DNA of 64,000 nucleotides from Piromyces finnis finn. Lineage: Eukaryota; Fungi; Neocallimastigomycota. The stretch spans positions 124,001-188,000 of the forward strand of contig MCFH01000030.1 of the NCBI GenBank assembly GCA_002104945.1, written 5' to 3'. Positions 2,348 through 54,748 of the stretch are shown here, in pieces (position 1 is the stretch's first letter; every line of letters starts with the position of its first letter). The notes beneath the pieces are model-generated. The model did no database searches. It saw nothing but the letters and a program-made list of their open reading frames with translations, and was not told the DNA's origin. The translations under genes were made by a program, and so were the position numbers.

Positions 2348-7494
<5,147 letters not shown>

Positions 7495-49899: not shown

Positions 49900-50116
49900 T
49901 ATTAAGAGTTGTTTAATTTAGGTTTATAATTATGTCAACTTTATTAATATATTTTATGATAAAGAACTACTTGCGTTACATTCTTCTAAAACTACATGTA
50001 TTTATACATTTACATTGTGGCTTAAACATATAATCAAATACAATATATACAAATACGTTTTAATACATTTCAATACATTTGAATACATGTGACATAACGT
50101 TTTACATATTCTAACA
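49900..50116 (-). repeat. 3' LTR (217 bp; element strand TGTTAG...CTTAATA)
   Basis: Apparently identical to 54532-54748 and immediately preceded on the element strand by the PPT. Confidence 0.93.
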
Positions 50117-50128
50117 TTCCCCCTCAAA
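50117..50128 (-). other. Polypurine tract (TTTGAGGGGGAA) abutting the 3' LTR
   Basis: The element strand reads GGTTTGAGGGGGAA|TGTTAG, the typical Ty1/copia PPT-LTR junction. Confidence 0.9.
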
Positions 50129-50487
50129 CCTAATTTTCTACTAAGTAAAATTTGGTTTGCTGGTGAATATGTGCATTTTATTATTTCTAAACTATTAACT
50201 ATAAACTAAATCTAATGTTTAAAATTTTTATATTTCATTAATTGGAATTTAAAATATTTCACATATATTATTCGCTAATTGCTTTAAAGAATTTAAATAT
50301 TACCCTATAACTTCGTTTTTATGGATAAACTGAAAACCTTTGTATAATTGGGTAGTATTAAAGTTTAAAATTTGGATTGGATATTCATAAATTGTTATAT
50401 CATCCATTAAGGATTGAAAACCCTTCCGGTTTTACATTATCCTATAAACTATATTGGTAATCTCTCTGAGATTTACACAGAATTATA

Positions 50488-50642
50488 GACAACACATGGT
50501 TTATCTCTTTGATTTTACGTCCTTATGACAACACATATGGATAACTCTTTTTGGTTTTACGTTCTCTTAACAACCTATGGTTAATCTTCTTGGTTTTACG
50601 TTCTTCGGACAACCTATGGATAACTCTGGTTTTATGTCCTTA
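50488..50642. repeat. Imperfect 39-42-bp tandem repeat x4 in the element's 3' internal region
   Basis: Units (G/A)ACAAC..ATGG.TAA.CT..T.GGTTTTACGT.CT start at about 50488, 50527, 50569 and 50608. Confidence 0.8.
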
Positions 50643-52552
50643 TAATTACAATTTTCTTTAGAATATTAGCATAATTGTATTTCAATCTATTTGTAAATAC
50701 TAATTAATAATGGTAAAATTTTAATTAAATTCTTAATAGTTATTTAGTTTATGTATATTGAATTTTAACATTTTCTTTTAGGTGTTTTTCCTTCCTTTTA
50801 TGCCTTTTGTATTGATTAATTATTCTTATAATATTTAAGAATATTTTACTTTGTATTTGAAATTTTGTTCTTTTCATTTTTACATATTGAATCTTATAAA
50901 TTTTTACAATTTGAATTTCAATTCATTCTATTTATTAAGCCTTAGTTTCTATGCAATGTTTTAGTTATTTCCAATGTTTAACTAGAAACAAAAATTATTA
51001 TCTTGAATTTTAAATTTCGTATATTCACTACTTCCCCCTCAAATCTAGATGTTTAGTAATAAATACTTAGATTTGAAAAAGAGAAATTTAAATTTCATAA
51101 AATTTCATTCATTTTGCATCAAATTTTCATAATAATGAATAATTTTCCATAACATATACGATAAGTATTAATACCTATATAAATAATAAATAACATATTC
51201 TAATGTTTTCATTCATTTTTCTCAATTGCTTATCCTTTAAAATATAGTGAAATAATATTTTCATGATAATATATTTTAATGTAGTGATAATCATAGAATA
51301 TCAAACTAATGAATAAAATATTCCTCAATTATGTATTTCTTTACTTCAAATTAAAATAAGTAGATATACCAGTAAAATTATAACAAGTTAATATTGTAAG
51401 ATAATGACATTTAAAATATCGATTGTTGAAGAGAATAAAGTTCTTCTAAATTATATCGAAGTCGGCTCGGTTAATTAGAATGTCAGCTAATTGGTCGGCG
51501 ATCACTCACTACGTTGAAAGTGGCGATTTATATATGAGGTTACTAAATCACCGTAAATTATATTTTAAAACGGCGTCACAACATTCTTGAATGTTGGTAA
51601 TAAATAAATATGATGAATCAATGTCATCTAAATCTAAGGAGCCCTTACTATGAAGGTACTACATTGTTATTGATGGGACCAAATTAAATATATATAGGTC
51701 TAAAACCATCATTAATAATTATCTATGAATATAACTCATTTCACGCTAAGTTAAATCATGATAAGTTGTTAAAATATTATTGAATATACCCATTTCACGC
51801 TAGGTTATTCAAAGTATATATATATGTAGAATATGCTCATTTCACGCTAAGCATTTCTAACTTTAATAAATTACCTCATTTGAAATATTTGCTATGTATA
51901 TTAGCAATAACAGCCTACGGGATGAGCATTTGACCAGTAATATATTTGCTTTATAGGTAGCAATAATTTAAATAATGCTTTTGAGGCTAAATATTATCTT
52001 AAAGTATTGTTATAATGATTTAATTCAAAGAATAGTATACTGGATTAAATTATATAATACTGATTTGAGTGAAATTATCATAAAGAAATTGATTGACATT
52101 TTCACAAGGATAGTTTCAATGTTTATTGCATAATTTCATTACAATAGGGTATTTTATACAAACTTATCAAATAATGTTTAATTATTCTAATTCATGTTTC
52201 TAATTGTATAAATTTTATGTATTTTCTTTATGTTCTATCTTTCCTCTATGGCGGAAAGAATATTTTCTCATTAAAATAGTAGTAGTTAAAGTATTTGAAT
52301 ATTTCACAAACAATTTATTTACTTGAAATAAATATGTATGCTTTCAATAACAATAATGCTATTTTATGAATGTTAATAAAACTAGTTCTTTTGAAAATAA
52401 AATGAATGTTTGTGGAGATGTTAATTGTATGTTTATGAATATTTACATAATTGAATATATGGATTTTTAAATGATGATGAATGTAAATTGACATAGTGAG
52501 TAGATCAAAATCAAATTAATAAATTTAATAAATTGAGTAAATTAGGAGAATT

Positions 52553-53854
52553 CTAATATACAATGTTTATTTGCCAAAACATTACTAACGTTAAAATAAT
52601 AAATACATTTGCGAGAGAAATATATTTGAAGTTTACAGTTCCGTTTGAATCGTCATTATTATTTAATGAAGAATCATTTTCATCTTTATCATCTTCATCA
52701 ATGTAGTCGTATGTATCAATGTATTTGAATGTGTAAAAATTACATATTTCGCTTGATGCATCTACAGATCTTTTCCCAAAATTAAAATACTCTGAAGGTG
52801 AGTATCCATAAAAAAAAGTTACTTCGTCATAAAAATCATAAGTAATATCATATGTTTTACCATCTCCTGCGATAAAACTTGGAATATCTTCATCAAGAAT
52901 ATTATGTATTCCAGTTTTTATTCCATTCCAAAAATTTTTAAGAAAATTTTGATCTTTCTCCTTTTTGATGTGTTCAAAATCCCATGTGTCATATCCTGAA
53001 AAATGAATTTTAACAGTGTTCCATCCGGATTTTGGATAAAAAGCATAATCAATATTGACATAATAGCTTCCTAACGTTAAACACCAAAGTCCTCTACCTG
53101 AATTTTTTGCATTTCTTATTACAGTTTCATTTTTTATTTTTTCATCTGTGACTTTATCTTTAATTATTTTTTTTAGTTCTTTTTTCATATTTTTGTATTT
53201 CAAACTCTTTTTCATTTCTTCATTAATTAGAGTATTGCTTGCAGGTACTGTTTTTCCAGACTTTCCTCTATAATGGCCAATTGCCATAGCTAAATCAGAT
53301 ATATAATCATATGTAGATGGCCTAGAATTTTTATACGCTTCAATAAATTTTATTGTAACTTCAGCAATTGTGTATGATAGATCTAACATTGGCAGCATTT
53401 GACTAACTGTAACTTCAGGACAGTTATCATTTAAATTTAAATTTACATCATCAATATCTGTATTATTATTTAGATTTGTATTTGGAACACATAGTTGAAC
53501 AACATCATCTCCTGGGCATTGGTTTAAATATCTCGTGTAAGATTCTTCTGAACAGTTACCTTCATTTATATTTTTACATTTTCCTGTTGTTGGAAGAATT
53601 GTTCCATCTGTAAGTGTATCGACATCTTTTATACAGCATTTAATCTTTTCCGAGTCATGTTTACAAATTTTTGGATATGCTTTAGCATTGCCAGTTTGTT
53701 TACCATCTAATTTACATTTATCCTCATTAACGCAAACACCTGTTCCGACATTGGTTACATGACATTTTTGATTTTCAGCAGCAATTACCAATGGTAGAAT
53801 TAAAATTGTCGAAAAAATGTTTAAAAAATATATTACTTTGCTTCTTAATCTCAT
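52553..53854 (-). CDS. Intronless LTR-element cargo gene: signal peptide, two Cys-rich modules, putative colicin M-like domain, KR site, C-terminal TM/GPI anchor (433 aa)
   Basis: Clean 1,302-bp ORF. N-terminal hydrophobic stretch to ~aa 25; Cys modules at aa 31-123; motifs AIGHY(191-195), LTLG(259-262), YDTWDF(288-293), GKTYDI(332-337); hydrophobic C-terminus ISLANVFIILTLVMFW. The ORF itself is certain; the product name is inference. Confidence 0.85.
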   Translation of the reverse strand: MRLRSKVIYFLNIFSTILILPLVIAAENQKCHVTNVGTGVCVNEDKCKLDGKQTGNAKAYPKICKHDSEKIKCCIKDVDTLTDGTILPTTGKCKNINEGNCSEESYTRYLNQCPGDDVVQLCVPNTNLNNNTDIDDVNLNLNDNCPEVTVSQMLPMLDLSYTIAEVTIKFIEAYKNSRPSTYDYISDLAMAIGHYRGKSGKTVPASNTLINEEMKKSLKYKNMKKELKKIIKDKVTDEKIKNETVIRNAKNSGRGLWCLTLGSYYVNIDYAFYPKSGWNTVKIHFSGYDTWDFEHIKKEKDQNFLKNFWNGIKTGIHNILDEDIPSFIAGDGKTYDITYDFYDEVTFFYGYSPSEYFNFGKRSVDASSEICNFYTFKYIDTYDYIDEDDKDENDSSLNNNDDSNGTVNFKYISLANVFIILTLVMFWQINIVY

Positions 53855-54517
53855 TCTTTGGAGTATTTATAATATTAATATATTTGATGAAATTTAATAA
53901 CTCAATTGTAAATAATTATATAAAATAAATTTAGAGTTCACTAGTTAATTTATACTGTTTGTAGTGAATAAGGTAAACTGAGAATGAAATTCTATTATTT
54001 CTAATATAAACATATTGTTTAGTTTAAAATTTAAATTACTTTTAAAAATGGATAAATTTATTTATTTTAAATTTTAAATTTCAACTTAAATTTCTGAATT
54101 TCAATTGTTCTTAAATTTAAATTATAAATTTTAATTTTTAAATTTAAATGTTTGTTTATTCTTAAATTTAAGATCTAAATCTAAATTATTTTATTTAGTA
54201 TAAATTAATTTATGTCTAAAGTATAATATTATCAATGTTCCATGTTTCTTGGACGGAGTTTTCTTTCGCTATATAGTCAGTATTGTTAATTAGGCAATTT
54301 TGTGACTTAGTTTTTTTTTTTTTTTTTTTTTTTTTTTTCAAGATTTCAAAGTTTTAGATCTCTAAATTTCATAATTTTCAATTAAAACTTATATTGTAGG
54401 GATTAGGGTTTCCAATAGTTTTCTCCTATGACATAATGTGTCCGGCGGTTTGATTCATCTTTCAGAGAATCATCTGAGAGTCAATGAGAGTCATTGATAT
54501 TCTCTCATGAGAGTCAT

Positions 54518-54531
54518 TGAGACTCTTAATC
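54518..54531 (-). promoter_or_regulatory. Primer-binding site GATTAAGAGTCTCA, complementary to a tRNA-Lys(CUU) anticodon stem-loop
   Basis: Directly abuts the 5' LTR. The + strand reads TGAGACTCTTAATC, i.e. stem-CTCTTAA loop-stem as in eukaryotic tRNA-Lys(CUU) (recalled sequence; host tRNA not seen in this window). Confidence 0.65.
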
Positions 54532-54748
54532 TATTAAGAGTTGTTTAATTTAGGTTTATAATTATGTCAACTTTATTAATATATTTTATGATAAAGAACT
54601 ACTTGCGTTACATTCTTCTAAAACTACATGTATTTATACATTTACATTGTGGCTTAAACATATAATCAAATACAATATATACAAATACGTTTTAATACAT
54701 TTCAATACATTTGAATACATGTGACATAACGTTTTACATATTCTAACA
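54532..54748 (-). repeat. 5' LTR (217 bp)
   Basis: Same length as, and no differences seen from, 49900-50116. Flanked by the TSD on one side and the PBS on the other. Confidence 0.93.

What the first reader, a model, noticed from the sequence alone, without database searches (positions are those of the whole stretch)
52805..53299. Cargo protein's central domain looks like a colicin M-type lipid II hydrolase
By-eye comparison with the colicin M catalytic domain as I recall it (AVAHYLWG...AYLGNITL...YDDKYDFN...HR...GESLT...GKEYQI) gives the same ordered motifs: AIGHYRG (191-197), CLTLGSYYV (258-266), YDTWDF (288-293; D289/W291/D292 in place of catalytic D226/Y228/D229), E322, GKTYDI (332-337). 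The LG-to-first-Asp spacing is 28 residues versus ~30. The His-Arg dyad after the DF is not clearly preserved (only H295), so this is a hypothesis. If real, a gut fungus is mobilising a bacteriocin-derived, peptidoglycan-precursor-destroying enzyme, plausibly against competing rumen bacteria.
Basis: inference. Interest (0 to 1): 0.85.

Follow-up and report, generated by a model that had tools for sequence, protein, structure and literature searches.

The report
Colicin M-like toxin in gut fungus
A secreted surface protein of the anaerobic gut fungus Piromyces finnis carries a domain with the fold and part of the active-site motif of colicin M, a bacterial enzyme that destroys a cell-wall building block, so the fungus probably uses a toxin taken from bacteria against gut bacteria.

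Summary

Sequence libraries (Pfam, NCBIfam, PDB) find nothing. Two AlphaFold models (pLDDT 78 and 87) nevertheless retrieve only colicin M-family catalytic domains as top hits. Foldseek's first 13-14 hits are all ColM-family chains plus BtpeA. An independent aligner ranks all five ColM-fold representatives (four ColM-family chains and the BtpeA toxin domain) top of 48,161 chains (Z 5.2-7.3).

D289, W291, D292 and E322 are conserved in 79-97% of 29 homologues. The His-Arg dyad essential in colicin M is absent.

The domain belongs to an undescribed family that includes:
- bacterial Rhs C-terminal toxins followed by lipoprotein (periplasmic immunity-like) genes;
- a Tritrichomonas musculus gene.

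In the fungus it sits between a signal peptide plus Cys-rich module and a GPI-like tail. Phage-type lysozyme paralogues share that chassis. All are cargo of a multi-copy LTR element.

Verdict: a real remote ColM-fold homologue and probably an antibacterial envelope-targeting enzyme. Lipid II cleavage itself is unproven.

The parts
52553..53854 (-). Complete single-exon gene, 433 aa plus stop (protein P0001)
   Evidence: ORF list. The identical protein is on record from a 631,782-nt contig. Three further intact paralogues exist in the genome.
53777..53854 (-). Signal peptide, about residues 1-26 (MRLRSKVIYFLNIFSTILILPLVIAA)
   Evidence: One of only two hydrophobic segments in the protein. It is essentially identical (one residue shorter) in the GH24 lysozyme paralogues P0002 and P0004. 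Cleavage is inferred, not predicted with a dedicated tool.
53471..53776 (-). Cys-rich N-terminal module (residues 27-128, 10 Cys), fold and function unknown
   Evidence: Shares 76-85% identity with the same region of the GH24 (PF00959) lysozyme paralogues and is related to the N-terminus of a GH25 (PF01183) protein. No Pfam or Atlas lead.
52802..53320 (-). ColM-fold domain (residues 179-351).
   Evidence: Family HMM envelope 179-351. AF2 models with pLDDT 78 and 87. Top structural hits are colicin M, pectocin M1/M2, syringacin M, PaeM and BtpeA CTD. Atlas neighbours are Colicin_M, DUF3289, DUF6402 and Rhs tips.
52976..52990 (-). D289-T-W291-D292-F293, the counterpart of ColM D226-K-Y228-D229-F230 (putative metal/pyrophosphate site)
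   Evidence: hhalign alignment. Conservation in 29 homologues: D289 23, W291 28, D292 25, F293 29. The role of D226/D232 in cation binding is taken from PMC8469651.
52556..52630 (-). C-terminal hydrophobic tail (residues 409-433) preceded by S-N-G, a GPI-anchor-type signal (inferred)
   Evidence: The second of only two hydrophobic segments, at the very C-terminus. Conserved in the lysozyme paralogues and in L029.
49900..50116 (.). 217-nt direct repeat (the 3' LTR relative to the gene's strand)
   Evidence: 100% identical to 54532-54748. At least 41 copies at 98-100% identity in the genome. A purine-rich tract abuts it, and a 5-bp AAAAT duplication flanks the element.
54532..54748 (.). 217-nt direct repeat (the 5' LTR relative to the gene's strand)
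50117..52552 (.). 2.4-kb conserved, ORF-less internal part of the element downstream of the gene
   Evidence: No ORF of 100 aa or more. At least 25 copies at 91-99% identity. Covered by very deep contigs in four public runs, while the outside flanks are not.

Best explanation
Residues 179-351 form a remote homologue of the colicin M catalytic domain. The domain belongs to a previously undescribed sequence family. The bacterial members of that family are C-terminal toxin tips of Rhs polymorphic toxins paired with periplasmic lipoprotein immunity genes.

Anaerobic gut eukaryotes (Neocallimastigomycota, and also Tritrichomonas musculus) most likely acquired the domain from bacteria. In Piromyces finnis it is built into a secretion chassis of signal peptide, Cys-rich module, effector domain and GPI-type tail. 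The same chassis carries a phage-type (GH24) lysozyme in sister copies.

The whole gene is amplified as cargo of a non-autonomous LTR retroelement.

The likeliest mechanism is as follows. The enzyme is displayed on, or released from, the fungal surface. It attacks a polyprenyl-pyrophosphate-linked envelope precursor of bacteria (lipid II or a close analogue), using the conserved D289/D292 pair to hold a divalent cation at the pyrophosphate. Gram-positive neighbours are the likeliest targets, because their lipid II is not shielded by an outer membrane. The fungus needs no immunity protein because it has no peptidoglycan.

Shown: the fold, the motif alignment, residue conservation, the Rhs and lipoprotein context of the bacterial relatives, the shared chassis, and the LTR copies.

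Inferred: the direction of transfer, secretion and GPI anchoring, antibacterial activity, and the substrate.
For: Fold:
- Foldseek on two models lists only ColM-family chains (plus BtpeA CTD) as its first 13-14 hits (E 1e-3 to 2e-1, probability up to 1.00), then drops to E ~0.5-1.
- VIA-align against 48,161 representatives, run without Foldseek, puts pectocin M1, BtpeA CTD, colicin M, syringacin M and PaeM at ranks 1-5 (Z 5.2-7.3, 134-153 residues aligned).
- Model residues 1-174 map onto ColM 111-271, which is the catalytic domain.
- The ESM Atlas, by shape and by language-model features, returns Colicin_M, DUF3289, DUF6402, Rhs/YD-shell tips and MuF fusions, all bacterial.

Sequence:
- hhalign score 23.0 against a shuffle maximum of 18.8.
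- Conservation of D289, W291, D292, F293 and E322.

Toxin context:
- P0050, P0080 and P0138 carry the Rhs core-end (DPxGL-type) junction directly before the domain, and one is named 'RHS repeat-associated protein' by its source.
- Each of three bacterial loci (GC 43-53%) has a small lipoprotein-signal ORF immediately downstream.
- One locus lies beside a Tlde1 (PF10908) peptidoglycan-targeting effector.
- DUF3289, another ColM-fold family without Pfam ColM membership, is experimentally a periplasm-acting T6SS toxin (PMC11148199, PMC12135965).

Fungal side:
- Four intact copies exist; dN/dS is 0.32-0.38 against the divergent paralogue.
- The signal peptide, N-module and tail are shared with GH24 lysozyme paralogues.
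- The ORF has 28% GC and lies on a 632-kb fungal contig.
- ColM and PaeM cleave Gram-positive lipid II in vitro (PMC8469651).
Against: - No Pfam, NCBIfam or PDB sequence match at E<=10. The PF14859 and PF11692 HMMs find nothing in the genome.
- Structural Z scores are middling (5-7), in a range the tool warns can reflect common arrangements.
- H235 and R236 of ColM, each essential, have no conserved equivalent. ColM-like domains with degenerate motifs (PmnH) are thought to be inactive.
- D289 is Asn in 4 of 29 members, and D226N abolishes ColM activity.
- Transcription is not proven. The four runs holding the gene are only guessed to be RNA.
- Young copies give uninformative dN/dS values.
- The tree is unrooted and the taxon labels of most metagenomic members are guesses, so the direction of transfer is not demonstrated.
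Confidence: 0.6

Rival explanations
1. The domain has a ColM fold but different chemistry or a different target. It may be an envelope-directed toxin that acts on another substrate (for example another undecaprenyl-linked intermediate, a phospholipid or the glycan). Alternatively it uses a different catalytic constellation (R254, H194/R196, N318, E322) in place of the His-Arg dyad.
For: The HR dyad is absent. A different set of residues is conserved: R254 22/29, H194 22/29, N318 26/29, E322 28/29. The ColM catalytic mechanism is itself unresolved. DUF3289 and DUF6402 are as near by structure and features as Colicin_M, and their substrates are unknown. The lipoprotein immunity genes show only that the site of action is periplasmic, not what the substrate is.
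Against: The one motif known to bind the cation and pyrophosphate (D-x-aromatic-D-F) is the best conserved stretch, and it aligns precisely with ColM.
Confidence: 0.25
2. The domain is a domesticated, non-toxic module. It may have lost catalysis and now serve fungal surface biology (adhesion, wall remodelling, binding of bacterial envelopes), or simply ride along with the retroelement without benefit to the host.
For: The HR dyad is missing. Degenerate ColM domains such as PmnH and PmdH are considered inactive. dN/dS between young copies is near 0.75. 11 of 20 sampled element copies carry no ORF of 120 aa or more, so cargo is often lost. There is a GPI-type tail.
Against: The acidic pair and E322 are conserved across fungi, a protist and bacteria. 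dN/dS is 0.32-0.38 against the divergent paralogue. The same chassis carries bona fide lysozyme domains. One paralogue pairs the domain with a possible NlpC/P60-like module.
Confidence: 0.1
3. The resemblance is due to chance or convergence. The domain is unrelated to ColM and merely shares a common alpha/beta arrangement and a few short motifs.
For: Z is only 5-7 and TM about 0.45-0.5 against PDB chains. hhalign probability is low (6%). No HMM-level hit.
Against: All five ColM-fold representatives occupy ranks 1-5 of 48,161 chains in two separate models. Foldseek's top 13-14 hits are exclusively that family. The shuffle control was never reached. The motifs are collinear with the structural alignment. 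Atlas neighbours by two methods include Colicin_M. The bacterial relatives are toxins with periplasmic immunity-like partners.
Confidence: 0.05

Closest known systems
Colicin M family (Pfam PF14859: colicin M, PaeM, syringacin M, pectocins M1/M2), lipid II-degrading bacteriocins
   Same: Same catalytic-domain fold end to end (ColM 111-271). Collinear motifs A.xHY..G, LG, D-x-aromatic-D-F, E and GKxYxI. The domain is used as an exchangeable killing head on varied delivery modules.
   Different: No HMM-level sequence membership. The His-Arg dyad of DxYDx5HR is absent, and there is a 14-20-residue insertion after WDFE. The host is a eukaryote. A signal peptide, Cys-rich module and GPI-type tail replace the TonB box and the receptor and translocation domains. 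There is no linked immunity gene.
DUF3289 (PF11692) T6SS effectors with DUF943 immunity
   Same: A ColM-fold family recognised only by structure. It is toxic in the periplasm and makes cells round up (PMC11148199, PMC12135965). It is among the nearest Atlas clusters to this domain by shape and by features.
   Different: The PF11692 HMM finds nothing in this genome. These effectors are bacterial and T6SS-delivered. Their substrate is also unknown.
BtpeA C-terminal domain (PDB 9jdi), Bacteroides fragilis T6SS effector with immunity protein BtpiA
   Same: Structural neighbour at the same level as the ColM chains (Z 5.9-6.3, 144-153 residues aligned). It comes from a gut bacterium.
   Different: Its biochemical activity could not be found in the searchable literature. 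There is no detectable sequence similarity.
Rhs C-terminal polymorphic toxin tips with downstream lipoprotein immunity genes (metagenomic P0050, P0080, P0138, P0140)
   Same: Same sequence family as the fungal domain (family-HMM domain E 4e-33 and 8e-21 for P0050 and P0080; profile E 1e-31 to 1e-10 for P0080, P0138 and P0140), with the same A.xHY..G and D.[WF].F core.
   Different: They are delivered as tips of Rhs cages in bacteria with 43-53% GC, are paired with immunity genes, and share only 28-37% identity with the fungal domain.
Antibacterial genes domesticated by eukaryotes: tick/mite dae (from Tae amidases), GH25 lysozymes spread across kingdoms, Trichomonas NlpC/P60 hydrolases
   Same: A eukaryote uses a bacterial cell-wall-directed weapon without needing immunity.
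   Different: The toxin class is different (ColM fold). The domain is combined with lysozyme paralogues on one chassis and multiplied by an LTR retroelement.

Membership tests
Pfam Colicin_M (PF14859) | Score above the gathering threshold of the family HMM | tested here: not met
   No hit at E<=10 for the whole protein or for any of 29 domain homologues. The six-frame search of the genome with PF14859 found nothing, although the controls were also silent.
ColM structural superfamily | Fold of the ColM catalytic domain (residues ~124-271) | tested here: met
   Ranks 1-5 of 48,161 chains are ColM-fold proteins (Z 5.2-7.3, 134-153 residues aligned). Foldseek's top 13-14 hits are the same. Atlas TM to the Colicin_M cluster is 0.54.
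ColM family | Signature DxYDx5HR: the acidic/aromatic half (D226, Y228, D229) | tested here: met
   D289-x-W291-D292-F aligns to D226-K-Y228-D229-F. Conserved in 23, 28 and 25 of 29 homologues. Tyr is replaced by Trp.
ColM family | Signature DxYDx5HR: the His-Arg dyad (H235, R236) | tested here: not met
   The aligned positions (I316/H317) and H295 are not conserved, and a variable, low-confidence insertion follows WDFE.
ColM family | Cleavage of lipid II between undecaprenol and pyrophosphate, dependent on a divalent cation | not testable with these tools
   Needs a biochemical assay.
ColM-type bacteriocins | N-terminal TonB box plus receptor-binding and translocation domains, with a linked immunity gene | tested here: not met
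   The N-terminus is a signal peptide plus a Cys-rich module. No other ORF of 100 aa or more lies within the element.
Bacterial polymorphic toxin C-terminal domains (Rhs-CT) | The domain occurs directly after the Rhs core-end junction and is followed by a small immunity gene | tested here: met
   Met for the bacterial relatives P0050, P0080 and P0138. Lipoprotein ORFs follow at L004:686-1090, L008:~3340-3735 and L010:620-1030. Not applicable to the fungal gene itself.
DUF3289 (PF11692) | Match to the family HMM | tested here: not met
   No match in the genome, while the E. coli control did ring. It is a structural and feature neighbour only.

The most novel reading that the evidence does not exclude
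An anaerobic gut fungus runs a eukaryotic counterpart of a bacterial polymorphic-toxin system. A constant secretion and anchoring chassis carries exchangeable antibacterial heads: a ColM-fold lipid-II-type enzyme, a GH24 lysozyme, and a possible NlpC/P60-like hydrolase. These genes are copied and diversified by a non-autonomous LTR retroelement. The same ColM-fold family was captured independently by a gut parabasalid. It would be the first eukaryotic lipid II-cleaving enzyme, active from the outside on Gram-positive competitors.
Probability: 0.3. Interest if true: 0.85.

Novelty: new variant of a known kind. Interest (0 to 1): 0.72.

Why it matters
ColM-fold enzymes are so far known only as bacterial weapons against bacteria. 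A searchable-literature check found no eukaryotic example.

A secreted fungal version would extend the list of antibacterial genes that eukaryotes have taken from bacteria to a new class, one that attacks a peptidoglycan precursor. It would also give a natural example of a ColM-type enzyme built to work without an outer-membrane import system, which the field names as the main obstacle to using these enzymes (PMC8469651).

The finding also defines a new, unannotated toxin family in Rhs systems, with candidate immunity proteins.

Finally, it shows a retroelement multiplying host-beneficial secreted effectors. This bears on how anaerobic fungi hold their ground against gut bacteria.

Tried and rejected
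- Direct sequence searches of the protein against Pfam, NCBIfam and PDB found nothing useful. An 8-sequence profile against PDB gave only chance hits.
- hhalign of the family profile against the single ColM sequence gave nothing. A ColM family profile was needed.
With P0080 it recovered only Rhs-core matches (Akkermansia and a MAG), not the toxin domain.
- A sample of 401 genomes from that phylum gave three weak hits, one of them broken. The bacterial taxa that carry the family therefore remain unknown.
- The function of the BtpeA C-terminal domain could not be found in the library.
- The N-terminal Cys-rich module gave no Pfam or Atlas lead.
- dN/dS between the young copies is uninformative because there are too few changes.
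- The four public runs holding the gene are kept only as contigs and are only guessed to be RNA. Expression, strand and transcript ends could not be established.
- Bacterial contamination was considered and rejected. The ORF has 28% GC, lies on a 632-kb contig, exists in four copies inside fungal LTR elements, and has eukaryotic targeting signals.
Full report
WHAT IS THERE

The window is extremely AT-rich (14-25% GC). The interval 52805-53299 lies on the minus strand inside one uninterrupted ORF, 52553-53854 (433 aa), and corresponds to residues 186-350.

The assembly has 56.46 Mb in 232 contigs. The window is C157:124001-188000. ORFs elsewhere in the genome are 100% identical to proteins named Piromyces finnis (P0002 = L023, P0006 = L029), so the organism is P. 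finnis or something indistinguishable from it.

SEQUENCE-LEVEL SEARCHES

Pfam, NCBIfam and PDB sequence searches of the whole protein returned nothing relevant.

Homologue searches found a recurrent domain of about 160 residues (residues 179-351 here). The exhaustive search gave 76 hits in all, and 57 stretches of the domain were found among the retrieved proteins. It occurs:
- in several Neocallimastigomycota proteins, behind Cys-rich repeats, CBM18 chitin-binding modules or a ricin-B lectin;
- in a gene of the gut parabasalid Tritrichomonas musculus (KAK8843783.1, on a 1.59-Mb contig between a protein kinase and an ankyrin-repeat protein);
- in bacterial metagenomic proteins.

No member hits any Pfam family consistently. 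This is an undescribed family.

IS IT COLICIN M-LIKE?

Two AlphaFold2 models were made, one from 8 sequences (pLDDT 78) and one from 29 (pLDDT 87, pTM 0.80).

- Foldseek against the PDB listed only ColM-family chains (colicin M, pectocin M1 and M2, PaeM, syringacin M) plus the BtpeA C-terminal domain as its first 13-14 hits. E ranged from 1e-3 to 2e-1 and probability reached 1.00. The next hits had E ~0.5-1.
- An aligner that does not depend on Foldseek compared each model with 48,161 representative chains. In both runs the five representatives with a ColM fold took ranks 1-5 (Z 5.2-7.3, rmsd 3.6-5.1 A, 134-153 residues aligned). The next row was Z 4.5-5.0 with half the aligned length.
- The model aligns to ColM residues 111-271, which is the catalytic domain and not the receptor or translocation parts.
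- The Z values are middling in absolute terms. The argument rests on the fact that every ColM-fold representative, and nothing else, is on top in four searches.
- The ESM Atlas searched by shape returned only bacterial clusters: Colicin_M (TM 0.54), DUF3289, DUF6402, Rhs/YD-shell tips and a MuF fusion.
- The language-model feature search independently returned DUF3289, DUF6402 and Colicin_M clusters.

For a residue-level test I took the real cma gene from pAPEC-O1-ColBM and collected 52 PF14859 proteins. I aligned a 45-sequence ColM profile to the 29-sequence family profile with hhalign.

- The best local alignment (score 23.0, P 0.006) pairs L261-G262 with the ColM LG, D289-x-W291-D292-F293 with D226-K-Y228-D229-F230, E322 with E241, and G332-K-x-Y-x-I with GKEYQI.
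- A second, collinear local hit pairs A191-x-x-H194-Y195...G200 with ALAHYLWGNG (E 0.018).
- 100 column shuffles of the ColM profile gave a maximum of 18.8 and a median of 11.9. The reversed profile gave 14.3.

CONSERVATION

Counts out of 29 homologues:

| Residue | Conserved |
|---|---|
| A191 | 29 |
| G262 | 29 |
| F293 | 29 |
| W291 | 28 |
| E322 | 28 |
| G200 | 28 |
| Y270 | 28 |
| G287 | 27 |
| P325 | 27 |
| N318 | 26 |
| D292 | 25 |
| D289 | 23 (Asn in 4) |
| R254 | 22 |
| H194 | 22 |

The His-Arg dyad has no conserved counterpart. H295 is variable, the aligned positions 316/317 are variable, and a low-confidence insertion follows WDFE. In ColM, H235A and R236A leave under 2% activity, and D226N is dead (PMC8469651). 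The chemistry therefore cannot simply be transferred.

WHAT THE BACTERIAL RELATIVES SAY

P0050, P0080 and P0138 carry the Rhs core-end junction immediately before the domain. P0138 is named 'RHS repeat-associated protein' by its source. Their contigs have 43-53% GC.

In three independent loci the toxin gene is followed directly by a small ORF with a lipoprotein signal peptide and lipobox: L004:686-1090, L010:620-1030, and L008 from about 3340 once the start is extended. This arrangement is expected for immunity to a toxin that acts in the periplasm.

In L008 the next cassette is a Tlde1 (PF10908) peptidoglycan-directed effector with its own small partner. A true PF14859 member is also annotated as Rhs-associated (P0128).

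DUF3289, another family recognised as ColM-like only by structure, has been shown to be periplasm-toxic, to cause cell rounding, and to be a genuine T6SS effector-immunity pair (PMC11148199, PMC12135965).

Together these observations support the reading 'envelope-directed antibacterial toxin'. They do not fix the substrate.

ARCHITECTURE AND GENOMIC SETTING IN THE FUNGUS

The protein has only two hydrophobic segments, at residues 5-28 and 409-433. These fit a signal peptide and a C-terminal GPI-type signal preceded by S-N-G (inferred). Residues 27-128 hold ten cysteines.

Both ends of the protein are shared with paralogues whose middle is a phage-type lysozyme. The signal peptide and Cys-rich module are 76-85% identical, and the last ~40 residues are 78% identical in two of them. 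The lysozyme is PF00959 at E 9e-26. A related N-module also precedes a GH25 domain (P0009).

The gene lies between two perfect 217-nt direct repeats (49900-50116 and 54532-54748). A 5-bp AAAAT duplication flanks the element, and a purine-rich tract sits next to the downstream repeat. The repeat occurs at least 41 times at 98-100% identity, and the 2.4-kb ORF-less internal region at least 25 times.

All four genomic copies of the ColM-fold domain (C157, C46, C192, C151) sit inside such repeat pairs. Of 20 sampled elements:
- 2 carry the ColM-fold gene (in addition to this window's copy);
- 5 carry the GH24 gene;
- 1 carries an unrelated 196-aa ORF;
- 12 have no ORF of 120 aa or more in the sampled cargo stretch.

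One further copy (C182), judged from coordinates alone, has almost no room for cargo.

The C151 copy (514 aa) lacks the Cys-rich module. It adds a second domain whose nearest feature-space neighbours are NlpC/P60, CHAP and endolysin clusters. This is a lead only (score 0.92).

Compared with the window's gene, copies C46 and C192 are 98.8% and 89.6% identical. That leaves too few changes for a meaningful dN/dS. Against the divergent C151 domain, dN/dS is 0.32-0.38 at dS about 1.

EXPRESSION

Four public runs hold the stretch as contigs. Coverage starts exactly at 49900, falls away within the right-hand repeat (by about 54550), and is near zero outside. Contigs break at the borders of the modules shared with the paralogues.

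The runs are only guessed to be RNA, and contigs cannot show strand or level. Transcription is therefore likely but not shown.

ORIGIN

A maximum-likelihood tree of 32 domain sequences gives a well-supported Rhs-tip clade (99/95) next to the main fungal clade. A second group mixes GC-richer, presumably bacterial sequences with the Tritrichomonas cluster.

The tree is unrooted and most labels rest on amino-acid composition. Every structural relative is bacterial, while the eukaryotic members are confined to gut anaerobes. Transfer from bacteria, possibly more than once, is therefore the economical reading. It is not demonstrated.

MECHANISM AND ODDS

- A ColM-fold homologue: about 0.9.
- An antibacterial, envelope-directed enzyme: about 0.7.
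- Cleavage of lipid II itself: about 0.4.

An outside-acting enzyme would reach lipid II most easily in Gram-positive bacteria. ColM and PaeM accept Gram-positive lipid II in vitro. A fungus has no peptidoglycan, which would explain the lack of an immunity gene.

The main rival keeps the fold and the toxic role but changes the substrate or the catalytic residues.

NOVELTY

Searches of the paper library found no report of ColM-like domains in Neocallimastigomycota or any eukaryote.

The phenomenon of eukaryotes domesticating bacterial cell-wall weapons is known. The toxin class, the shared chassis with lysozymes and the retroelement vehicle are new variants.

Noticed in passing
window 49900-54748: The gene is the only ORF of a 4.85-kb element bounded by perfect 217-nt direct repeats. 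The element has a 5-bp AAAAT target-site duplication and a purine-rich tract. The repeat has at least 41 copies in the genome and the internal part at least 25.
   Followed up: partly
window 50117-52552: A 2.4-kb internal region without any ORF of 100 aa or more. It is 91-99% conserved among at least 25 copies and is covered by contigs of very high depth (hundreds to thousands) in four public runs. Its function is unknown.
   Followed up: no
L029:33-1577 (-) = G000:C151, 514 aa: This paralogue has a different signal peptide, no Cys-rich module and a ColM-fold domain. It also has an extra C-terminal domain (Cys...GHHMGIV) whose nearest feature-space neighbours are NlpC/P60, CHAP and endolysin clusters. 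It could be a two-headed wall-attacking protein. The public annotation (P0006) starts inside the ColM-fold domain.
   Followed up: partly
L013, L014, L020, L023, L027 (five element copies): The same element carries 400-401-aa genes with the same signal peptide, Cys-rich module and C-terminal tail, but with a GH24 phage-lysozyme middle (PF00959). The effector appears to have been swapped as a cassette.
   Followed up: partly
L026:1941-2531 (+) = G000:C196: One element copy carries an unrelated 196-aa ORF with no signal peptide and no Pfam match.
   Followed up: no
G000:C182:376471-379602: An element copy with only about 270 nt between the internal region and the far repeat, so effectively without cargo. 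In addition, 12 of 20 sampled copies have no ORF of 120 aa or more in the sampled cargo stretch.
   Followed up: no
L034:5001-5555 (Tritrichomonas musculus GCA_039105265.1, JAPFFF010000034.1): A 184-aa member of the same family (KAK8843783.1) lies in a gut parabasalid genome, between a protein kinase and an ankyrin-repeat gene, with no obvious signal peptide. P0152 lies on a 57.7-kb contig with 16% GC from another AT-rich eukaryote.
   Followed up: partly
L008:2543-5295; L004:1-1090; L010:76-1486: Bacterial orphan toxin-immunity arrays. Each has an Rhs-tip or stand-alone member of the family followed by a small lipoprotein ORF. In L008 the next pair is a Tlde1 (PF10908) effector with a 152-aa signal-peptide ORF, followed by a DDE transposase.
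   Followed up: partly
P0003, P0010, P0012, P0014 (metagenomic fungal-type proteins): These have tandem ~35-residue six-Cys modules (C.SQGG.C.NP..C.G....GLCPGG...KCC) in front of the ColM-fold domain. P0003 has two ColM-fold domains in tandem, and P0034 fuses the domain to a ricin-B lectin. The fold and ligand of the Cys modules are unknown.
   Followed up: no
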